From positions 18,228,001 through 18,292,000 of the forward strand of contig NW_026889758.1 of assembly GCF_033153115.1 (NCBI RefSeq): a DNA stretch of 64,000 nt, read 5' to 3'. A model generated the notes under the pieces. The model was not told where the DNA came from, ran no database searches, and saw only the letters and a program-made list of their open reading frames with translations. This document shows positions 14,301 to 52,608 of the stretch, one piece after another (within the stretch, counting starts at the first letter, position 1; every line of letters starts with the position of its first letter). The position numbers and the translations under genes were made by a program. This DNA comes from Saccostrea echinata (Eukaryota).

Positions 14301-15563
14301 CAGCAATCATGTCCATAAGTTCTTTTTCCGTCGGGTCCTGACCCATTGACCTCATCACTGCCCCCAGTTCCTCCGTACTGACCGTCCCATCCCCATCCTT
14401 GTCAAACACCAAGAAAGCCTCTTTAATGTCTGAGACAAAGAGAACAACAATTAGTTCGTTAGATAAATAAGTAATTTTTATCAGAAGTGGATATCATGCA
14501 GGATATGATAAGGAAATTGAATCGTGCAATATTATATTTATATTCTGTCCGTCAGAGAAATAAAATTATCCTTGTATCAAAATATGTTGATAGATGGTTG
14601 ATGAAAATGGAAAAATGGAGAGTTGTTATTTTAAAGGTCTCATTCCACTTTTCAAAAGTTTCTTTGTTGGCGTGCTATGGTTAACGGTCAACTTAATTTT
14701 GAACGTATTGTCTTCTCACAAATTATTATATAAAACATAAAATTTTGTATCATAACACAGAATTTTATGTTTCGATAAAAATAGTAATATGATTATAAAG
14801 AGAATATTATGAATCATTGTTGGTGTTGATGATTGAATTACGAACACTCTGCATCAATAATTAAAAATGTTGTGACATCATCGTATTTGCTTATCAGATA
14901 ATAAAAAAATCAATCCCAGAAATTTGACAAGTTCTCTTTATCAGTTTAGTAAATGTATTCCGTTTTTCCTCTACTTTTACTCAATGTATCTTAAGCAAGA
15001 TTGAACTTTAAAATAAAATTCATCAATCTTTTCTATGACATACCATTTATCTGCTCTTCTGTTAGGTTTTCAACCTTAAATATACATAAAAGGGGAAATA
15101 ATGAAAACTTTGAATTAAGAGATATACAGACAAATGCAAGGTTGATCATACTTTCAAAACTTAGCGTGGAATATAGTGTATTTCAGTTCATTACTCACAG
15201 ATTTTAAAACCTGTTTTAAATTATGTTTACACGTGAAAGAAAATACTCTGTAAATACATTTGAATTCCCTTTTTGTTTATTTTCCATAAGAACCTTTAGA
15301 ATTTTATTTACATTAACGTCAATGATTTTTAAATTACTGCCCATGACTCCCCGTTTTGAAAATATCAAAATAAGTCTTTCTTCTTTCTCCATTTTAAAAA
15401 CAAATTATTTTGTCTTTTTTGGTTGTGTAAATTATCACAGTTAATCTCATTAAGTAGGTGTAATCTCATTAGATTTTATACCAAAAAGATGTACATGTAA
15501 TCTCATTTAATGCATCATCAAATCGATAATTACTTTAGTTAAATAGCCAGTATTACTTACCAT
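11359..15563 (-). CDS. Calmodulin-like protein, paralogue 2 (5 coding exons; EF4 dead)
   Basis: Exons: 15561-15563 (ATG|gtaagt), 15044-15074, 14286-14429, 13591-13833, 11359-11387. Protein: [149 protein letters not shown]. Matches ORF 13559..13822. Confidence 0.92.
12071..12201. mobile_element. Short palindromic MITE in the last intron of paralogue 2
   Basis: CGGGGCCATA...TATGGCCCCG termini with internal GAGCTC/ATCTCAGT..ACTGAGAT/GAGCTC symmetry. Confidence 0.6.

Positions 15564-19493: not shown

Positions 19494-19573
<80 letters not shown>
19494..19573. repeat. (TA)n microsatellite
   Basis: About 40 TA units. Confidence 0.95.
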
Positions 19574-19580
<7 letters not shown>

Positions 19581-20150
19581 AATAATAATAAGACATGACG
19601 TCATAACATTTAACGTACAACAAAAACATGGTCCATTTGAAAACGTATACTTGGTAAAAAGTAACACAGCCCAATTGAAATATAAGGCTTATTTGATGAC
19701 AGGTGACTTGCTTTACTTGACATGATGTAGATAGCATCCGACGGTGTAAGACGTTAGGAAGATGTATTCCATTTATCGTATGCATTTGTGTAAGGTGGGA
19801 CAGCTATCACGGTACAAAGTCCATATGCATTGGGCAGAAACAGACAACAGTTAATGAAGGTAATTTAATATCAAGCAGTGATCACCATAAATTGATAGGC
19901 ATCTCGTTAGAGTTCTTTTTTCTGTATCGGGAATTGATACATATACTTAACATGTTTCATTTGATAATGTTCAGGGGATGCCAGGCATGATATTTTATCC
20001 GAGAAACGGCAGTGACATGATAGGTAACGACATCCTTCAATGAACAGATTTTATACGAAATCTGGTAGTGAAAAACATCCACAAACCAAAAAGAAAAAGA
20101 ACATGGATCCCATTGCCTATTCACAGGTTTATATAAATATATATAATTGG

Positions 20151-21870
20151 TGGCATATTTATTTTTGATGTGCCATCTTTTTGCTGTATACTTACTGTTT
20201 TTTATATTTTTTGCAAATATTGTTTATCGGTAAATTTAGGGGATCAGCATATTGATATGTATTGTGTGAATACCTTTTGGTCTGATCCCCTATCATGTTT
20301 ATGTATATATATTTCTTATTTTCGTCATTTTTAATAAATGACATATTTCATCTCAACATTGGTGTTGATTTCATTGATTATAACTCAGCAAAAACAGAGC
20401 TGCGGTGAGTTTGTGCAGCATGAGGAAACATAAAACAACAATTATGTAAATAATTTCATTTATGTGTTGAATGCTGTCTAGTTTTCTTTTGTTTAAATGT
20501 AAGTAAGTAAATATTGTATTTTGTATTGTTTTAAATCTCAATATATTGATTTTTCTTCATCGGCTTGAATTCTCCCATGCCTTGCAGGTGTCAGGTGCAC
20601 GTTATGCAATTTTCCCCATTTCTTCAGTTTCGGCTACTTGTTACACAACTCCAAAATTTTCCATGGTCAAACCTTACCCCTATGCAAGCTAATAGCCAAT
20701 CAGAAATGACCATCATGGTCACGTGTTTTGATGCTGTCGGTGGCTGACCAGTCAGCGATGGGTCATTCTCGCCTCATCTATGCTACTAATAACAACAAAA
20801 TATTTGGCACACCCACCACCACCCCTGTCTTTCCTACCTTATTTTGCATTTATATATTTTAATTTTACTGGCATATTTATTTTTGATGTGCCATCTTTTT
20901 GCTGTATACTTACTGTTTTTTATATTTTTTGCAAATATTGTTTATCGGTAAATTTAGGGGATCAGCATATTGATATGTATTGTGTGAATACCTTTTGGTC
21001 TGATCCCCTATCATGTTTATGTATATATATTTCTTATTTTCGTCATTTTTAATAAATGACATATTTCATCTCAACATTGGTGTTGATTTCATTGATTATA
21101 ACTCAGCAAAAACAGAGCTGCGGTGAGTTTGTGCAGCATGAGGAAACATAAAACAACAATTATGTAAATAATTTCATTTATGTGTTGAATGCTGTCTAGT
21201 TTTCTTTTGTTTAAATGTAAGTAAGTAAATATTGTATTTTGTATTGTTTTAAATCTCAATATATTGATTTTTCTTCATCGGCTTGAATTCTCCCATGCCT
21301 TGCAGGTGTCAGGTGCACGTTATGCAATTTTCCCCATTTCTTCAGTTTCGGCTACTTGTTACACAACTCCAAAATTTTCCATGGTCAAACCTTACCCCTA
21401 TGCAAGCTAATAGCCAATCAGAAATGACCATCATGGTCACGTGTTTTGATGCTGTCGGTGGCTGACCAGTCAGCGTTGGGTCATTCTCGCCTCATCTATG
21501 CTACTAATAACAACAAAATATTTGGCACACCCACCACCACCCCTGTCTTTCCTACCTTATTTTGCATTTATATATTTTAATTTTACTGGCATATTTATTT
21601 TTGATGTGCCATCTTTTTGCTGTATACTTACTGTTTTTTATATTTTTTGCAAATATTGTTTATCGGTAAATTTAGGGGATCAGCATATTGATATGTATTG
21701 TGTGAATACCTTTTGGTCTGATCCCCTATCATGTTTATGTATATATATTTCTTATTTTCGTCATTTTTAATAAATGACATATTTCATCTCAACATTGGTG
21801 TTGATTTCATTGATTATAACTCAGCAAAAACAGAGCTGCGGTGAGTTTGTGCAGCATGAGGAAACATAAA
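20151..21870 (+). repeat. 718-bp head-to-tail repeat (2.4 copies, B-A-B-A-B); candidate non-autonomous Ngaro-like element
   Basis: Units start at 20151, 20869 and 21587. The 284-bp B part occurs three times and ends AACATAAA. Copies are nearly identical (one visible A/T difference, CAGCGATGGG vs CAGCGTTGGG). Flanked by ATAAATATATATAAT at 20133-20147 and 21866-21880. Confidence 0.85.
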
Positions 21871-21939
21871 TATATATAATGTGCTGATTACCTTTAGCAT
21901 AAGTTTAACTTACGATGTGTATATTAACCTTTCACAGAA

Positions 21940-22575
21940 TGATGGATATGTTCAGCATGAGTTCGAAGGATACTCGAAATAGAAGACACATCTGTTTCAT
22001 ATTTGGGTGATTTTAAAAAAAGTCAGAAAAAGACATTGATGGCAAACTGACAATTAAACTTTATGATAAATGTGATGTCTTCATTTTTTCTATCGTCAAC
22101 TTCATCTATTCATATAGCAATTTCCACTATCACCTGCATATGGAGTTTGTGTCTCAGTTGATTCGATAGGCAAAGCATTTACTACATACGAACACTTTCT
22201 AAAACGAGGCATATTACAAATAAGTTGATGGTACAAGGATATCAATAATCTCCTTTAAAGTAAACATTTCGCATAGCCTATGGTCGATACAATGATCTTG
22301 TTTGCAAATAAAATCTGTCATTAAGTCGAATGTTAACTGAAAATTGTTCATACAGATTGTTAGGCCATTATGTTCACATTGCAATGTCTACAGATTTTTC
22401 CGTCTTTTCCGATCATGACAAGGAGCACATGCGGGTGTGAACAGTCGGCAGGGGATGCTCACTCCTCTATTGCACCTTATCCCACCTCTGATGCTTTAGA
22501 AGTTGCTCTGCTCCTGATTTCTATTGTTTGAATGGACTTCTGAGTTTGTATACTGTTTGTTATCTTCATAGTCCA
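21940..22575 (+). mobile_element. Penelope-like 3' fragment, decayed
   Basis: Degenerate KLYDK..FSIVNF..SNFPLSPAYGV coding sequence and the 3' UTR motif at about 22430-22495. Confidence 0.72.
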
Positions 22576-46523: not shown

Positions 46524-46690
46524 TTAAGGCTTATGAGAATAAGCTAAGTTTATGTTGAAAAGAATACCGTAACTTTAACATCTACCAGGTTAGGTTCTGA
46601 TGGTTACATTTAATTTGTTCAACGATTCTGATTGGATGTTATTTATAAACTAGATTCAGTGGCAGAGTGGATTGTAAACAGAAGTCTAAT
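46524..46690 (+). repeat. Ngaro terminal repeat A1
   Basis: Direct repeat of 51713-51879. Confidence 0.93.
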
Positions 46691-46852
46691 ATTTATTGCC
46701 CGTTTTCCACGGTCTTAAAATTCTAATTGTGACTGTGCATTGCGTGTACAGAATTATGTGAGATATGTGAACAATTTTAATACAGAAGTTGTATGTTTCC
46801 GTGATTTATAAACTGTAATCGTAGTTTGGAATTCAGAGACAGTTATCTCACA

Positions 46853-47443
46853 ATGGCGGATGGTAATTCAAGACCGCGCACTCGCCAGCGTCCATTACAA
46901 AATATGTCAAGTCGATGGGACGCTACTAACGTAAACAATTGGACAACTACACAGTTTCAAGAAGAACTTCTAAAATTAAACATTCGTGTCCCTGCTAATA
47001 TTGGAAAGGCGACTCTTAGAAAACTCTACTTGGAAAATGTAAACAGAACCCCCACGGTGAGAGAACGGCGGGAAAATGACTCGTCCCAAAATAGTCATCC
47101 TGATGAGCTTCCTAATTCCTCGACAGAAACACCCATTGTGTCCCAGTCTGAAGAAACTTCCAATATCGGAACATCTACACATACCGAGTTTACCGACCAG
47201 ACCGTCCAACGTGCTCAAACGCATATGAATTCGGGCTCGGAATCCTTGCGTAAAAATTCCAACATGGCCGCCAGTGTAAATAATCAAGTAATCAGCGGTA
47301 TGCTGAATACTATGAACACAATGCAACAAACCGTTATGGGTCTACAACAGACAGTGCTCCGACTGATGTCAGATAAGACGGGAAATACAGGAAATAGCAC
47401 AATGACACGGGTAATTCACTGGACACGGCGTATGCGGCCATGA
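46853..47443 (+). CDS. Ngaro Gag-like ORF, N-terminal part (probably frameshifted from the next ORF near 47400)
   Basis: ATG at 46853. LEM/SAP-like N-terminal helical motif (WTTTQFQEELLKLNIRVPANIGKATLRKLYLEN), a low-complexity linker and a coiled segment. The downstream frame is already open from about 47400 (NDTGNSLDTAYAAMRSQ). Confidence 0.7.
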   Translation: MADGNSRPRTRQRPLQNMSSRWDATNVNNWTTTQFQEELLKLNIRVPANIGKATLRKLYLENVNRTPTVRERRENDSSQNSHPDELPNSSTETPIVSQSEETSNIGTSTHTEFTDQTVQRAQTHMNSGSESLRKNSNMAASVNNQVISGMLNTMNTMQQTVMGLQQTVLRLMSDKTGNTGNSTMTRVIHWTRRMRP

Positions 47444-48255
47444 GGAGCCAGACTGTCCCAGCAACTCAGAATACAGGTGGGTATAGATTACCTCAGACAG
47501 AATTTGGTGTCCCCTCTGAAAACCTAACGCATTTAGACATTCTTGGGGATAAATTCAGACAGAAGATATGGGGGGGGGGGGAAGACGTGAATTTAGCAGT
47601 ATTGCTAATACCCAAATATGAGACAGAAAAGACGAAGAATATCACAATAAACTTGTTAAAATATGAGGATCCTCGACTCCATAAACAATTGACTATATCC
47701 GAATTTATTACTGCATTCGGACGATACAAGAGAGTCATGTGTCAAAAGTACCCTGAAAGGCAAGTTGAACTGGACAGGTACGAGGCTAACATAGCGGATA
47801 TTCATAACGTTTATGGTCAAAAGTTCTATGATTACCATTACCAGTTTTCTGCCAGAGCAGCCACAGCACTAAGAGACCATAATGTTAAGGTGGATTGGTC
47901 AGTTAAGGACTTGAATCTTATGATGATAGTGATGGGAAATGCTCAAGCCAATACCTGTAATACATGTTCATCAACCTTACACATGTCTGCTTTCTGTCCA
48001 AAAATATCTGAAAGTAGAATTCCAGTGATTACTTCATCTCCGTCACAAAACCCGAAGTCATCATCAATGGACAGATATGGACGACCAAGGACCATAATAG
48101 ATGGGAAAGAAGTGTGTAATAACTTTAACGAAAACAAATGCAAAAGACAAAATTGCCAGTTTGAACATCTGTGCACAACATGTCATTCTAAGGACCATGG
48201 ATCCTCATTATGTAAGAATGTTTCCAGAGTCCAGCCTAAGGTTGGAAAAAAGTGA
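47440..48255 (+). CDS. Ngaro Gag-like ORF, C-terminal part with Cys/His zinc fingers
   Basis: CNTCSSTLHMSAFC and CNNFNENKCKRQNCQFEHLCTTCHSKDHGSSLC (CCHC/CCCH-type knuckles), typical of Gag in YR retrotransposons. Confidence 0.82.
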   Translation: MRSQTVPATQNTGGYRLPQTEFGVPSENLTHLDILGDKFRQKIWGGGEDVNLAVLLIPKYETEKTKNITINLLKYEDPRLHKQLTISEFITAFGRYKRVMCQKYPERQVELDRYEANIADIHNVYGQKFYDYHYQFSARAATALRDHNVKVDWSVKDLNLMMIVMGNAQANTCNTCSSTLHMSAFCPKISESRIPVITSSPSQNPKSSSMDRYGRPRTIIDGKEVCNNFNENKCKRQNCQFEHLCTTCHSKDHGSSLCKNVSRVQPKVGKK

Positions 48256-48270
48256 CTAGAAAACAGGACA

Positions 48271-49497
48271 ATGATGACAGATGATCTCCTAACAACGCCT
48301 GTAAGCATTAAAGTTTTAACACATGAACTTTTCCATCATCCTGACAAAGAATTTGCGAAATATTTGTGTGATGGTTTTACTTATGGCTTTGATACTATGA
48401 TTTCTAATGCAGATGCTGATTCAGAAACCTTAGAATGTAGAAATCTTCTGTCGGCTAGAAATCAGCCAGAAATAGTAGATAAATTAGTGAAGACAGAAGT
48501 GGAAAAAGGTTTCGTGGTAGGTCCACTAGAGTCACTTCCATTCCCAAAATACAGAGTAAGCCTAATAGGCGTGGCAATTGGGAAATATTCAGGGAAACCA
48601 AGGCTTATCATGGACTTATCATCCCCTCATGATAACGAGCATCATGCCAGTGTCAATTCCATGATAGATAAAGAAAACTGTTCTCTGTCTTATGTTAAAA
48701 TAGATGACGCCATACGAATTATTCAGACTCTAGGACGTGGGACCACTATGTGCAAAACAGACATTTCCGATGCCTTTAAACTTGTCCCGGTTCTACCCGA
48801 ACAGTGGCATATGTTTTGTTTCAAATGGAGATCACAATATTATTACTATACAAAATTATCATTTGGTTGCAGATCAAGTCCAAAGATATTTGACAATCTT
48901 TCACAAGCAGTGTGCTGGATAGCGTATAACAATTATGGAATCAAATATATTCTACATCTATTAGATGATTTCATCACTTTCGAACATCCTGAAAATGACG
49001 GTGAAACAAACATGAATTTGTTGTATTATATCTTTCAAACTCTCAATATACCAATGGCTCTGCATAAAACCGAAGGACCTACCACGTGCTTAGAGTATTT
49101 AGGCATCATTTTAGACTCACAGTTAATGGAAGCCAGACTCCCAAATGAGAAATTCCAAAGAATAACAGAATTCCTTCACAAATTTCAATCACGCAAATCT
49201 TGTACGAAGAGAGAACTTCTGCAGCTACTGGGCCATTTGAACTTCGCCAGCCGTGTCATCCTCCCAGGAAGGTCTTTTGTTTCCCATCTTATTGCCCTAT
49301 CCACCACCGTTAAACAACTGCATCATTATGTGAAAATAAACGAACAATGTAGGGAAGACATGCAAATGTGGCTGAGTTTCTTAAGCAATTGGAATGGCAT
49401 TAATCTATTTTATAGTATGTCTCAGATTACATCAGAGGAACGAACTAAATCTTTATACAGATGCTTCTGCAACGGTAGAATATGGAGGGTTCTTTAA
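48271..49497 (+). CDS. Ngaro reverse transcriptase
   Basis: RLIMDLS, KTDISDAFKLVPV, LSFGCRSSPKIF, HLLDDF and YLGIILDS motifs of DIRS/Ngaro RT. Confidence 0.92.
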   Translation: MMTDDLLTTPVSIKVLTHELFHHPDKEFAKYLCDGFTYGFDTMISNADADSETLECRNLLSARNQPEIVDKLVKTEVEKGFVVGPLESLPFPKYRVSLIGVAIGKYSGKPRLIMDLSSPHDNEHHASVNSMIDKENCSLSYVKIDDAIRIIQTLGRGTTMCKTDISDAFKLVPVLPEQWHMFCFKWRSQYYYYTKLSFGCRSSPKIFDNLSQAVCWIAYNNYGIKYILHLLDDFITFEHPENDGETNMNLLYYIFQTLNIPMALHKTEGPTTCLEYLGIILDSQLMEARLPNEKFQRITEFLHKFQSRKSCTKRELLQLLGHLNFASRVILPGRSFVSHLIALSTTVKQLHHYVKINEQCREDMQMWLSFLSNWNGINLFYSMSQITSEERTKSLYRCFCNGRIWRVL

Positions 49498-49918
49498 AGG
49501 AAACTGGTTCTCCGAGCCTTGGACAGATGAAGTTAAACAATTATGTGATAGTGATACAGAATTATCAATTGCTTTCTTTGAGTTATATCCCATTGTTGTA
49601 GCTTCCATTCTCTGGGGTCATATGTGGAAGAAACAAAGAATAGTTTTTATGTGTGACAATTCGGCAACGGTAGCAATCTTAAATAACGGAAGATCAAAGT
49701 CTGTACATATTATGCCGTTAATGAGACGATTAACTCTTGTGTCTGCTCAACATAATTTTGTATTCTCTTCAATTCATGTTCCTGGTAAACAAAATACTAT
49801 AGCAGATGCTTTATCACGTTTACAGATTTCGAAGTTTCGCAGTCTGGTACCCAGTGCCCAAGAGCATGCAACCAAAGTACCACCACCCAAAGATGTTTTG
49901 TGGAGCTCGAAGACGTAG
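49394..49918 (+). CDS. Ngaro RNase H domain (separated from RT by a 1-nt frameshift near 49440)
   Basis: LYTDAS, FELYPI, CDNSATV and NTIADALSR motifs. Confidence 0.88.
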   Translation: MALIYFIVCLRLHQRNELNLYTDASATVEYGGFFKGNWFSEPWTDEVKQLCDSDTELSIAFFELYPIVVASILWGHMWKKQRIVFMCDNSATVAILNNGRSKSVHIMPLMRRLTLVSAQHNFVFSSIHVPGKQNTIADALSRLQISKFRSLVPSAQEHATKVPPPKDVLWSSKT

Positions 49919-50871
49919 TACAACAATTATGGACAAATGCCGTAGCACCAAGCACAAGATCCACTTATAGGTCTGCGTTCCATATGTACGTTCAATTTTT
50001 ATTGATGTCATGTGCCATTTCTAGTGCATATACTTCGGACATCCCAGTGACTGAAGACTATTTGATATACTTTGTAGCTCACTGTGTTAGTAGGCTTAAG
50101 CTAAGCTTTTCAACCATTAAGCTGTATTTGTGTGGTATTAAATTTATATGTCTTGAAAGCAACATTGCTTACCCAGATGTCACCAATCTGTCTCGACTTA
50201 AAGCATTGTTAAATGGTGTCAAACGAATGCAGTTACCATCTTGTAAGCTAAGACATCCTATAACTTTTGACATACTGAAAAAAGTTTGTATATATTTTCG
50301 TAGAACAGAAAGTTTTAGAAATTTTATGTTAGAAACTGTATGTACTATAGCATTTTTTGGTTTTTTAAGGTGTGGGGAATTTACCATTAAGGATTCTTTT
50401 GACCCCACAACAAACTTATGTGTTAGTGACCTTAGTGTTCTAGAAAGTTGTGTATTGTTAAATCTTAAGATCTCAAAAACTGATCCTTTTAGAAAAGGAA
50501 TTACAATTAAACTGTTCCCCACAAGCAACATAATATGTCCATTTTCAATATGTTGTAAATATTTAAAAGCACGCTGTTCCTTGCCCTTTTCAGCCAAGCA
50601 ACCATTATTTGTAAATAGCGATGGAAATGCTCTAACAAGAACTGAATTTATTTCTGAACTTAAGCATGCTCTTAAATGTATTGGATGTAATTCAGATGTA
50701 TATAATGGACACTCATTCAGGATAGGGTCAGCAACCACTGCAGCTGCTGTCCATATGGAAGACCATTTAATCAAGGTGTTAGGTAGATGGTCTTCTGATG
50801 CTTATTGTAGATATATTAGAACACCAGAAACTGTTTTACGAGAGGCACAAAAGTCAATGACAACTGTTTAA
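49900..50871 (+). CDS. Tyrosine recombinase (phage-integrase family) of the Ngaro element
   Basis: GFLRCGEF (R), KISKTD (K), GHSFRIGSAT (H-x-x-R) and LGRWSSDAYCRY (W, Y) catalytic set. Intact 323-aa frame. Confidence 0.93.
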   Translation: MELEDVVQQLWTNAVAPSTRSTYRSAFHMYVQFLLMSCAISSAYTSDIPVTEDYLIYFVAHCVSRLKLSFSTIKLYLCGIKFICLESNIAYPDVTNLSRLKALLNGVKRMQLPSCKLRHPITFDILKKVCIYFRRTESFRNFMLETVCTIAFFGFLRCGEFTIKDSFDPTTNLCVSDLSVLESCVLLNLKISKTDPFRKGITIKLFPTSNIICPFSICCKYLKARCSLPFSAKQPLFVNSDGNALTRTEFISELKHALKCIGCNSDVYNGHSFRIGSATTAAAVHMEDHLIKVLGRWSSDAYCRYIRTPETVLREAQKSMTTV

Positions 50872-51082
50872 TACCTTGTCACCTGACACTTATTTTCAGT
50901 TTTAGGTTTAGTTGACCTTTGTCAGATAATTGCATACAATTTTCGTTTTTTCAGCATTAAGAACTTTTATGTTTTATATTAGGATGTACATGTATATCAT
51001 TTCTATTCAGTATTATTAATATTGCATTTTTGGGGGCACTCAGCTTCATTTCGATTGCAACTACATTCACCTGAGTTTTGGC

Positions 51083-52608
51083 CATCATTTAATAATTTTT
51101 TACCATATATATATATTATTAAATTTTAAACCCCCAAAAAATCATGTAACTTGTTTTAAATAGCTTATATTCCGGCTCTTGTTACCTAACTATGAAGTGG
51201 CTTTCATTTCGGCATGCTGAGAGAAATATCTCACTAAATTCATAGAGAGGCTACACCGAGTTTATAAGCATCATCTTCCAGACATTCTCTTCCGGCTCTT
51301 GTATCCTGGAACCAGTCCATCTTTCAGTCTACCACACCGAGTTGAGTACTACGTGCTCTTCCGGATCTTGTCGGTCAAACATGACTGGTCTCCTATGCTG
51401 CTACACCGAGTTGAGTTTTGTCTTGGAAGTTGAACCTCAATCTCAAAGCACACCAGTTTCACCGAGTTGACTGGTACATATATCTGTACCTTTCTTCCGG
51501 CTCTTGGGACTGGTTCCGCTGTTCTGAGGATAGGGTTTTTAACTGATTAAAACTATGAGAAGCTGAGTCTGCCCCTATTTCTGCCAAAGTATATATATGT
51601 ATTTCAATGTTATTTGATGTTTTTGTATTGGAAGTTATTTGTGGAATGTTTAAATGTTAGACTTTGAATAAATGTTTTAACCTACTATACTATTTTATCT
51701 TTTCAACATAAATTAAGGCTTATGAGAATAAGCTAAGTTTATGTTGAAAAGAATACCGTAACTTTAACATCTACCAGGTTAGGTTCTGATAGTTACATTT
51801 AATTTGTTCAACGATTCTGATTGGATGTTACTTATAAACTAGATAAAGTGGCAGAGTGGATTGTAAACAGAAGTCTAATCGCCACCACCCCTACGCATCT
51901 CCATATTTTTCATTTTCATGTAAAATGCTTATTCATATATATTTTCATTCCCAAATTGGGTAGACTCAGCCTTTTATTCATCATTTAATAATTTTTTACC
52001 ATATATATATATTATTAAATTTTAAACCCCCAAAAAATCATGTAACTTGTTTTAAATAGCTTATATTCCGGCTCTTGTTACCTAACTATGAAGTGGCTTT
52101 CATTTCGGCATGCTGAGAGAAATATCTCACTAAATTCATAGAGAGGCTACACCGAGTTTATAAGCATCATCTTCCAGACATTCTCTTCCGGCTCTTGTAT
52201 CCTGGAACCAGTCCATCTTTCAGTCTACCACACCGAGTTGAGTACTACGTGCTCTTCCGGATCTTGTCGGTCAAACATGACTGGTCTCCTATGCTGCTAC
52301 ACCGAGTTGAGTTTTGTCTTGGAAGTTGAACCTCAATCTCAAAGCACACCAGTTTCACCGAGTTGACTGGTACATATATCTGTACCTTTCTTCCGGCTCT
52401 TGGGACTGGTTCCGCTGTTCTGAGGATAGGGTTTTTAACTGATTAAAACTATGAGAAGCTGAGTCTGCCCCTATTTCTGCCAAAGTATATATATGTATTT
52501 CAATGTTATTTGATGTTTTTGTATTGGAAGTTATTTGTGGAATGTTTAAATGTTAGACTTTGAATAAATGTTTTAACCTACTATACTATTTTATCTTTTC
52601 AACATAAA
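51083..52608 (+). repeat. Ngaro 3' repeat block B1-A2-spacer-B2
   Basis: B1 51083-51712, A2 51713-51879, spacer 51880-51978 (starts CGCCACCACCCC), B2 51979-52608. Confidence 0.93.

What the first reader, a model, noticed from the sequence alone, without database searches (positions are those of the whole stretch)
20133..21880. Non-coding 718-bp concatemer shares the Ngaro B|A junction architecture but has a TSD-like flank
Seen in sequence: the Ngaro B1|A2 junction reads ACATAAA-ttaag-GCTTAT GAGA ATAAGC-taag-TTTATGT. The junction of this repeat (20428-20465) reads ACATAAA-acaac-AATTAT GTAA ATAATT-tca-TTTATGT. The inverted arms are the same, the spacing is nearly the same (25 vs 24 nt), and the 6-bp hairpin shows compensatory GC/GC to AA/TT changes while keeping a GNRA loop. 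Both elements end exactly at AACATAAA and have a CCACCACCCC tract just before B. Both close a B helix with GGGG...CCCC-TAT (here GGGGATCAG/CTGATCCCC) followed by AATAAATG. The layout is B-A-B-A-B with no ORF. It is bounded by ATAAATATATATAAT on both sides, although tyrosine-recombinase integration normally leaves no such TSD. Inference: a minimal non-autonomous Ngaro-type parasite that replicates as a small circle or multimer. This copy may have been inserted by target-primed reverse transcription (Penelope/LINE machinery) rather than by recombination.
Basis: partly seen in the sequence, partly recalled or inferred. Interest (0 to 1): 0.8.

Follow-up and report, generated by a model that had tools for sequence, protein, structure and literature searches.

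The report
Truncated Ngaro retrotransposon tail with real TSD
The 718-base repeat is the repeated tail of an ordinary gene-carrying Ngaro jumping gene of this oyster, but it was inserted cut short at its front and with a genuine duplication of the target, which this recombinase-using class of element is not supposed to make.

Summary
Window 20151-21870 is 2.4 head-to-tail copies of a 718-bp non-coding unit, with one mismatch. The same 15 nt lie on both sides, and its B|A junction has the nested-palindrome layout of the other Ngaro in the window.

The "minimal non-autonomous replicon" reading is not supported. The unit is 98% identical to the B1-A2-spacer-B2 tail of a 7.7-kb autonomous Ngaro in the same genome (Saccostrea echinata), which has a weak GDSL-like ORF, a gag-like ORF, RT/RNase H and a tyrosine recombinase. 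The array starts with the 4 nt that precede B1 in that element, at the foot of a 14-bp hairpin. No other locus has a dimer.

The non-recombinational insertion reading is supported. Contigs from two other sequencing runs join 20132 directly to 21866. This is an empty allele with one copy of the 15-mer, so the duplication is real. Two other 5'-truncated copies carry 10- and 29-bp duplications and a third a marginal 5 bp. Seventeen canonical copies carry none. All end exactly at ACATAAA, without poly(A).

The most likely event is insertion of an incomplete cDNA by a route that bypasses complete recombinase integration. The enzymology is open.

The parts
20133..20147 (+). Left copy of the 15-nt flank repeat. 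20133-20137 (ATAAA) is target sequence that matches the element's own last 5 nt. 20138-20147 (TATATATAAT) is the target-site duplication proper.
   Evidence: The empty allele joins 20132 to 21866.
20148..20150 (+). TGG (TTGG together with T20147). These are the last nucleotides of the internal region upstream of B1 in the autonomous element, and they mark the 5' truncation point at -3/-4.
   Evidence: BLAST to the full element starts at its position 6705, which is 4 nt before B1. Loose ends at 20147 continue into the internal hairpin in other copies.
20151..20434 (+). B repeat, copy 1 (B1-type, 284 bp). It contains the GGGGATCAG/CTGATCCCC helix (20239-20290) and AATAAA (20333-20338), and it ends in ACATAAA.
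20428..20465 (+). B|A junction nested palindrome. Lower stem ACATAAA/TTTATGT, upper stem AATTAT/ATAATT, loop GTAA. The element boundary is after 20434.
20435..20811 (+). A repeat, copy 1 (377 bp). It carries the private substitution 20758 A; 30 of 30 other copies have T.
20812..20868 (+). 57-bp spacer S that follows A2 only. It is unique in the autonomous element and starts with the C-rich tract CCCACCACCACCCC (20812-20825).
20869..21152 (+). B repeat, copy 2
21153..21586 (+). A repeat copy 2 (21153-21529) plus spacer copy 2 (21530-21586). The second junction palindrome is at 21146-21183.
21587..21870 (+). B repeat, copy 3 (terminal). It ends exactly at ACATAAA, the normal 3' terminus of the family, with no poly(A).
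21871..21880 (+). Right copy of the 10-nt target-site duplication. The 15-nt repeat is 21866-21880 and includes the element's last 5 nt.
46524..52608 (+). The comparison element: a second, distantly related Ngaro (family 2). A1 46524-46690; ORFs 46826-50871; B1 51083-51712; A2 51713-51879; spacer 51880-51978, starting CGCCACCACCCC; B2 51979-52608. It is a canonical insertion without a TSD.

Best explanation
The array is the 3' terminal-repeat region (B1-A2-spacer-B2) of an autonomous 7.7-kb Ngaro retrotransposon family of Saccostrea echinata. It is cut off 3-4 nt upstream of B1 and carries one extra A-spacer-B unit. It is a young insertion that is polymorphic or lineage-specific.

It did not arise by the normal complete recombination between the circle junction and a target, which leaves no duplication. 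Instead an incomplete, 5'-truncated cDNA was inserted.
- Its right end is the element's normal terminus, the point where the recombinase cuts the B|A junction. This end joined a target that ends in AA(A), as in normal integration.
- Its left end is where copying stopped, here at the foot of a 14-bp hairpin. Host repair joined this end after 10 nt of target had been copied twice.
- The extra unit came from a B1-to-B2 template switch during reverse transcription, or from a later unequal crossover.

Shown: the identity of the element, the truncation point, the real TSD with its empty allele, the exact 3' end, and the recurrence in other copies.

Inferred: that the right joint is made at the recombinase cleavage point or at a cDNA terminus (one-ended strand transfer or end capture), not by priming on polyadenylated RNA. 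Also inferred: that the hairpin stalled the polymerase.
For: Identity
- The unit is 98.3% identical to B1-A2-S-B2 of L031 (G000:C29:16923499-16931206) and of a second full copy on C52.
- That element encodes RVT_1, an RNase H-like RVT_3 and Phage_integrase, plus a weak GDSL-like ORF. It has the A1-ORFs-B1A2B2 layout.

5' end
- The window match to the full element begins at its position 6705, 4 nt before B1.
- A 14-bp perfect hairpin ends at -4 (dG -20.7 kcal/mol as DNA, -25.6 as RNA, z about -5.6).

Real TSD
- A 1108-nt contig in run X1 (502 and 535 nt on the two sides) and a contig in X2 join 20132 to 21866. They skip 1733 nt, which equals TGG + 1720 + 10.
- The left flank is single-copy in the assembly, so this is an allele or orthologue and not a paralogue.

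Recurrence
- 5'-truncated copies L005 (29 nt), L048 (10 nt) and L019 (5 nt) have flank duplications. The 17 canonical copies have at most 4 nt. The null maximum in 552 mismatched pairs is 6.
- All four TSD copies have AA, AAA or ATAAA just left of the duplicated stretch. The same is true of 16 of 19 canonical left flanks.
- All four end exactly at ACATAAA with no A-tail.
- AATAAA lies 95 nt before the B end, so a polyadenylated RNA would probably end inside B2. This is an inference.

Census
- Genome-wide there are 47 B ends but only 27 A starts, and 7 exact junctions. About 3 copies have an A start but lack a B end. Losses are therefore biased to the 5' side, as expected of incomplete reverse transcription.
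Against: - Only three clear TSD cases and one marginal case, in one low-copy family.
- Three further truncated copies (L045, L046, L040) show no duplication.
- The TGG at the left joint could be untemplated filler: L005 and L048 also have 1-3 nt of filler.
- The number of units (2.4) rests on the assembly alone. The runs laid were short contigs.
- Variable TSDs, 5' truncation and a T-rich primer site are equally the signature of LINE-type target-primed reverse transcription.
- No experiment shows what a Ngaro recombinase does with an incomplete cDNA.
- The 3' end of the Ngaro RNA is not mapped.
Confidence: 0.6

Rival explanations
1. Target-primed reverse transcription in trans. A LINE or Penelope-like endonuclease/RT nicked the target at a T-rich site. 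The 3'-OH annealed to the AUAAA at the end of a Ngaro RNA and primed a cDNA that stopped early. This is the same route as processed pseudogenes and SINEs, and it is the first reader's proposal.
For: - TSD lengths vary (5, 10, 10 and 29 nt), the copies are 5'-truncated, and the 5' joint has 0-3 nt of filler or 1 nt of microhomology.
- There is 2-5 nt of A-rich microhomology at the 3' joint.
- Loss is biased to the 5' side genome-wide.
- A template switch between B copies is easy for such RTs.
Against: - None of the four copies has a poly(A) or microsatellite tail, and none carries 3' flank from a source locus. All end at the exact base where recombinase-made copies end.
- The AATAAA signal lies 95 nt upstream of that base, so mature RNA should not end there.
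- No ribozyme was found.
- The target preference (AA just before the joint) equals that of canonical Ngaro insertions.
- No LINE sharing the tail was found, but this was not properly searchable.
Confidence: 0.25
2. A self-standing minimal non-autonomous Ngaro-type parasite. The 718-nt A-S-B unit replicates as a small circle or multimer, and this array is one of its integrated multimers.
For: - A-S-B-A-S-B has formally the full split-direct-repeat layout (A1-x-B1-A2-S-B2), so it could be mobilised in trans.
- Solo 718-bp A-S-B units are the commonest form of the family, with at least 15 copies. They could come from integrated minicircles.
- Each unit keeps the junction palindrome.
Against: - The array starts with TTGG from the internal region of the autonomous element, not with the spacer that precedes B in a circle.
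- No other locus has two adjacent units.
- All solo units can equally be A1 x A2 deletion products, like solo LTRs.
- The units here differ from the autonomous copies by the same 11 substitutions and from each other by one. They are therefore one event, not a lineage.
Confidence: 0.05
3. An ordinary recombinase insertion later damaged by deletion, with a chance AT-rich flank repeat; or an assembly artefact that duplicated a unit.
For: - The flank is low-complexity TA-rich sequence, and a (TA)43 tract lies 570 bp upstream.
- The unit number was not confirmed by long reads.
Against: - The empty allele has one copy of the 15-mer and the filled allele has two, which a deletion cannot produce.
- 10-nt matches never occurred in 552 control flank pairs.
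- A non-low-complexity 29-nt duplication flanks L005.
- The private substitution at 20758 marks two physically different A copies.
Confidence: 0.03

Closest known systems
Ngaro retrotransposons (DIRS order, tyrosine-recombinase retroelements with split direct repeats A1-[ORFs]-B1A2B2)
   Same: The array is 98% identical to the B1-A2-B2 region of an element with RT, RNase H and tyrosine recombinase, no methyltransferase, and the A1-ORFs-B1A2B2 layout. Canonical copies of the family insert next to AA(A) without a duplication, as described for DIRS-type elements (PMC3266345, PMC7192593).
   Different: This copy, and at least two others clearly, is 5'-truncated and flanked by a true target-site duplication of 10-29 nt. 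The published model excludes this. It also carries one more A-B unit than the canonical tail.
LINE-type 5'-truncated retrocopies made by target-primed reverse transcription (including SINEs and processed pseudogenes)
   Same: Fixed 3' end, variable 5' end, variable-length TSD, A/T-rich microhomology at the 3' joint, and short filler at the 5' joint.
   Different: No poly(A) or LINE-type tail. The 3' end coincides with a recombinase cleavage site inside a conserved palindrome. The element encodes no endonuclease.
Penelope-like elements and animal retrozymes (partial tandem copies, variable TSDs, hammerhead ribozymes)
   Same: Head-to-tail partial tandem, 5' truncation, variable TSD and non-coding repeat units.
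   Different: No hammerhead or other Rfam ribozyme on either strand. The tandem structure is explained by Ngaro's own B-A-B repeats.
Solo LTRs and internally deleted non-autonomous LTR or YR elements
   Same: At least 15 solo A-S-B units of the family look like recombination products between the direct repeats. The array is gene-less.
   Different: Solo units start at A position 1 and have no TSD. This array starts in front of B1 and has a TSD.
Folded single-strand recombination sites of tyrosine recombinases (integron attC, CTX phage attP); an analogy only
   Same: Two short stems separated by an internal loop, with the exchange point at the edge of the lower stem. Only about 3 nt of identity with the target is needed.
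   Different: Nothing here shows that the Ngaro junction is recombined as a single strand. The same bases can also be read as an ordinary duplex core site: ACATAA, 8 nt, TTATG.

Membership tests
Ngaro (DIRS-order YR retrotransposon), for the family the array belongs to | Encodes RT/RNase H and a tyrosine recombinase, with no DDE integrase and no methyltransferase | tested here: met
   L031 ORFs match RVT_1 (E 3.4e-7), RVT_3, Phage_integrase (E 2.2e-5) and, weakly, GDSL. No methyltransferase was found.
Ngaro (DIRS-order YR retrotransposon), for the family the array belongs to | Split direct repeats in the order A1-[ORFs]-B1-A2-B2 | tested here: met
   L031: A1 2000-2376, B1 8708-8990, A2 8991-9367 (+57-bp spacer), B2 9425-9707. 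L032 has the same layout.
Ngaro-derived sequence, for the array itself | Sequence identity to the terminal repeats of an autonomous element | tested here: met
   98.3-98.6% identity over 1002-1006 bp to element positions 6705-7708.
Canonical YR integration product | Full ends (A position 1 to B end), no target-site duplication, short identity with the target at the junction | tested here: not met
   The array starts at -4 of B1. A 10-nt TSD is confirmed by the empty allele. The 17 canonical copies meet the feature.
Propagating non-autonomous Ngaro derivative | Several genomic copies of the gene-less unit, or of a dimer, bounded by canonical ends | tested here: not met
   Only the window has two adjacent 718-bp units. 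Solo units are explained as recombination products. The search scored 40 of 114 candidates, so this is a lower bound.
Retrozyme / Penelope-associated tandem repeat | Self-cleaving hammerhead (or other) ribozyme in each unit | tested here: not met
   No Rfam match at gathering score in the window. Nothing relevant up to E = 10 in 19900-22100.
LINE-mediated retrocopy (TPRT) | Variable TSD and 5' truncation | tested here: met
   TSDs of 5, 10, 10 and 29 nt. 5' ends at four different positions.
LINE-mediated retrocopy (TPRT) | Poly(A) or LINE-specific 3' tail at the insertion's 3' end | tested here: not met
   All four copies end at ACATAAA and are followed directly by the TSD.
LINE-mediated retrocopy (TPRT) | A partner LINE or PLE that shares or recognises the 3' end | not tested
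Satellite / tandem repeat | Long arrays, at several loci | tested here: not met
   2.4 units at this locus only.
attC-like folded single-strand YR site | Recombination of one folded strand, resolved by replication | not testable with these tools
   Only the geometry could be compared.

The most novel reading that the evidence does not exclude
Ngaro elements have a second way into the genome. The recombinase cuts its conserved core site at the B|A junction (ACATAA, 8 nt, TTATG, nested in a hairpin that is kept by compensatory changes in at least 7 lineages). It joins only that one end of an incomplete, perhaps single-stranded, cDNA to an AA-ended target. The host then finishes the other end by strand-displacement synthesis and end joining. 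This gives LINE-like, 5'-truncated, TSD-flanked copies. Tandem tails made this way (A-S-B-A-S-B) are structurally complete gene-less mini-Ngaros and could seed non-autonomous lineages.
Probability: 0.25. Interest if true: 0.75.

Novelty: new variant of a known kind. Interest (0 to 1): 0.5.

Why it matters
The papers read here state that tyrosine-recombinase retrotransposons integrate by site-specific recombination and leave no target-site duplication. Annotation pipelines rely on that.

This locus is a clean counter-example. The filled and empty alleles are both seen. The 3' end is exact, the 5' end sits at a hairpin, and 10 nt of target are duplicated. Three sister copies have flank duplications, two of them clear. 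Across the genome, about twice as many 3' ends as 5' ends survive.

If this is general, part of the 'fragmented' DIRS/Ngaro load of mollusc genomes consists of primary truncated insertions and is not decay. In that case Ngaro cDNA can enter DNA without a complete recombinase reaction. That bears on the open question of what the true integration substrate of these elements is (circular duplex versus linear single strand; PMC7192593).

The conserved junction motif, with its invariant spacing, gives a concrete site to test with purified recombinase.

Tried and rejected
- Tandem Repeats Finder missed the array because the period exceeds 500. The repeat finder and a script found it.
- Ribozymes and other RNA families: nothing at gathering score, and only chance snoRNA-like hits at E > 1.
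- Repeating the TSD test on the window's second Ngaro family: too few copies, 3-4.
About 5-8 further B-end-only sites could therefore not be read.
I used a genome-wide pattern scan instead.
- The loose pattern AACATAAA...TTTATGT alone is not enriched (313 matches against 741 in the reversed control). Only the version that includes the inner hairpin is (28 sites, each matching on both strands, against 0).
- The palindrome at 14735-14770 has no associated direct repeats and was dropped as chance.
- The idea that the A2|spacer boundary is a splice joint, because A1 is followed by GTAAGA: rejected. The spacer occurs nowhere else in the element and family 2 has no GT there.
- Covariation within family 1: most copies are dead solo units, so this is not informative. 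One diverged copy (L043) keeps the hairpin with two G-T/G-U pairs.
- Literature: no paper in the library describes TSD-flanked truncated DIRS/Ngaro copies (papers read). Goodwin and Poulter 2004 is not held.
Full report
**What is there**

Window 20151-21870 is 1720 bp with period 718, which is 2.395 units. The only mismatch is 20758 A against 21476 T. I call the 284 bp that end in ACATAAA "B" and the following 434 bp "A plus spacer".

- The 15-mer ATAAATATATATAAT lies at 20133-20147 and at 21866-21880.
- On the right, its first 5 nt are the last 5 nt of the element, so 10 nt of target are duplicated.
- On the left, three nt (TGG) separate it from B.
- The region has no ORF above 90 aa, no significant Pfam hit (best E 0.24) and no Rfam family on either strand.

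**Which element it belongs to**

A search of the window's own genome with the unit found more than 50 matches. These included places where the first 377 bp of A stand alone about 6.7 kb upstream of B-A-B.

- One such place (L031, G000:C29:16923499-16931206) is a 7708-bp element. Its layout is A1 (377 bp), four ORFs, B1 (283 bp), A2 (377 bp), a 57-bp spacer found nowhere else in the element, and B2.
- The ORFs are a weak GDSL-like hydrolase, a gag-like protein without a Pfam hit, RT plus an RNase H-like domain, and a Phage_integrase-type tyrosine recombinase.
- A second full copy lies on C52 (99% identical).
- This is an autonomous Ngaro. The window unit is 98.3% identical to its tail.
- The recombinase's best database relatives are named Saccostrea echinata. 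They sit on contigs whose lengths equal those of this assembly, so the genome is that oyster.

**Forms of the family**

In the loci I could read there are:
- two full elements, plus one copy within a duplicated segment;
- one A-internal-B form;
- at least 15 solo A-spacer-B units of about 718 bp, which start at A position 1 and end at ACATAAA;
- several copies that lack the left end.

Exact-motif counts over the whole genome give 47 B ends, 42 B starts, 27 A starts and 7 exact B|A junctions. About 36 terminal B ends therefore face about 18 terminal A starts. Only about 3 copies have an A start but no B end. Losses are strongly biased to the 5' side. Only the window has two adjacent units.

**The duplication is real**

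I laid contigs of four public runs on 19600-22400.

- A 1108-nt contig of run X1 covers 19631-20132 and continues directly at 21866-22400. A contig of X2, a differently labelled organism, does the same.
- The skipped 1733 nt equal TGG + 1720 + 10.
- The left flank occurs once in the assembly, so this is an empty allele or orthologue with a single copy of the 15-mer.
- The runs are kept as short contigs of uncertain kind (DNA or RNA). They therefore prove that the empty form exists, but say nothing about unit number or expression.

**The pattern recurs in sister copies**

| Copy | Structure | Flank duplication |
|---|---|---|
| L005 (C25) | B(112-284)-A-B | 29 nt, not low-complexity |
| L048 (C28) | last 385 bp | 10 nt |
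| L019 (C9:28.46 Mb) | A(133-434)-B | 5 nt |

- With the same test, 17 canonical copies give at most 4 nt. The 552 mismatched flank pairs give at most 6 nt, and 19 of them give 5 or more. Three cases are therefore clear and one is marginal.
- Three other truncated copies (L045, L046, L040) show none.
- In all four TSD cases the target bases just left of the duplicated stretch are AA, AAA or ATAAA, which matches the element's last bases.
- The left flanks of canonical copies likewise end in A (19 of 19) and in AA (16 of 19). This fits the published rule that DIRS-type elements recombine at a short sequence shared by the junction and the target, without a duplication (PMC3266345, PMC7192593).
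- All four TSD copies end exactly at ACATAAA with no A-tail.

**The left end and the extra unit**

- BLAST of the full element against the window starts at element position 6705, 4 nt before B1. The window reads TTGG before B, as the internal region does, and not the TTAC of the spacer.
- In other copies the same position continues into the internal sequence (loose ends at 20147).
- Immediately upstream in the element lies a perfect 14-bp hairpin whose last paired base is -4. A polymerase that copies the plus strand from the B end would meet it exactly where the window copy stops.
- This points to a full-length template and to stalling. However, the 3 nt could be filler: L005 and L048 also have 1-3 nt of filler.
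- The canonical tail has B-A-B and the window has B-A-B-A-B. All units share the same 11 differences from L031, and one A has a private substitution where 30 of 30 other copies read T. The extra unit was therefore made from the same template at insertion (a B1-to-B2 switch) or afterwards (unequal crossover). I cannot tell which.

**The junction**

- The two Ngaro families in the window are distant: the recombinases are 27% identical and the RTs 34%.
- Both junctions nevertheless fold the same way. There is a lower stem ACATAAA/TTTATGT, an internal loop, an upper stem of 6-7 bp (AATTAT/ATAATT against GCTTAT/ATAAGC) and a GNRA loop (GTAA, GAGA). Family 2 folds strongly (z about -8 to -9) and family 1 weakly (z about -2).
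- A genome scan for this architecture found 28 sites, each matching on both strands, against none for the reversed control. They fall into at least 7 sequence variants.
- The lower part of the upper stem changes while staying complementary. One abundant variant has a perfect 10-bp stem.
- The distance from ACATAAA to the TTAT of the upper stem is 7 nt in all 28 sites, although 5-10 was allowed.
- Read as duplex DNA, this is ACATAA, 8 nt, TTATG: two short inverted arms around an 8-bp spacer, with the element boundary one base inside the spacer. That is what a tyrosine-recombinase core site looks like. This last point rests on my knowledge of Cre and Flp sites and was not tested here.
- Read as a folded single strand, it resembles an integron attC site. 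Neither reading is tested.
- The C-rich tract is the first sequence after A2 in both families and occurs nowhere else in the window. Its role is unknown.

**How it most likely happened**

Three things must be explained together: an exact normal 3' terminus without a tail, a variable 5' end, and a variable-length duplication next to an AA-ended target.

- *Favoured route.* An incomplete cDNA was joined by its normal B terminus, the recombinase cleavage point, to a target of the usual kind. The other end was then fixed by the host after limited strand-displacement synthesis.
- *Why not TPRT on mature RNA.* Priming on polyadenylated RNA fits less well. The only AATAAA lies 95 nt before the B end (about 40 nt in family 2), so mature RNA should end inside B2. 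No copy has a tail or transduced flank.
- *Main rival.* LINE- or Penelope-driven TPRT remains the main rival, because the other hallmarks are the same.
- *Capture variant.* Capture of a linear cDNA at a staggered break, without the recombinase, is a variant of my reading that I cannot separate.
- *Excluded.* Canonical insertion followed by deletion is excluded by the empty allele.

**Verdict**

The 'non-autonomous circle parasite' reading is not supported. The 'not inserted by ordinary recombination' reading is supported.

I found no description of TSD-flanked, 5'-truncated DIRS or Ngaro copies in the searchable literature. The original Ngaro paper was not available.

**Limits**

- No further genome letters could be fetched.
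- Only short contigs, not reads, could be laid.

Noticed in passing
L031:8668-8707 (G000:C29, just upstream of B1): A perfect 14-bp hairpin (stem AATGTGATTGCCAA, loop TTATGT) ends 4 nt before the B1 repeat. It may mark a priming or stalling site that defines the 5' border of B. Family 2 has no equivalent there.
   Followed up: partly
window 20812-20825, 21530-21543, 51880-51891: A C-rich tract (CCACCACCCC core) is the first sequence after the A2 repeat in two Ngaro families whose proteins are only 27-34% identical. It occurs nowhere else in the 64-kb window. Its function is unknown.
   Followed up: partly
whole genome, e.g. G000:C1:33357432, C2:5455260, C54:28690740: A more abundant Ngaro-type junction variant (13 sites) has a perfect 10-bp upper stem and a GAA loop. 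Four rarer variants, with upper-stem loops GATT, GATA, GATG and GAAG, also exist. All keep 7 nt between ACATAAA and TTAT.
   Followed up: partly
L007-L014, L017, L018, L020-L023 (various contigs): Solo 718-bp A-spacer-B units outnumber full elements of the family by about 5 to 1. They could be A1 x A2 deletion products or integrated minicircles. The two cannot be told apart from sequence.
   Followed up: partly
L031:3518-3965, 7974-8014, 8079-8213: The autonomous element carries internal tandem arrays: 83 bp x 5.3 between the hydrolase ORF and gag, a T41 run after the recombinase ORF, and 36 bp x 3.7 before B1.
   Followed up: no
G000:C29:16923499-16931206 and C29:16963807-16970261: Two copies about 40 kb apart share the same right flank, and the second lacks element positions 1-1248. 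This looks like a segmental duplication or an assembly feature, not two insertions.
   Followed up: no
window 21985-22110: A short repeat of about 110-120 bp with thousands of copies in the genome (2241 first-look candidates, about 80-91% identity) lies 100 bp right of the insertion.
   Followed up: no
window 19494-19578: A (TA)43 microsatellite lies 570 bp left of the insertion, so the target region is very AT-rich.
   Followed up: no
window 46524-52608: The family 2 Ngaro is a canonical, very young copy (B1 and B2 identical over 630 bp), has no TSD, and has only 3-4 copies in the genome.
   Followed up: partly
G000:C8:4270004-4294295 and C29:13105917-13128364: In two copies of the family, A1 lies 18-22 kb from the rest of the element. 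One ends at B1 (an A-internal-B form) and one is cut inside A2. These are probably nested insertions and repeat-mediated deletions.
   Followed up: no
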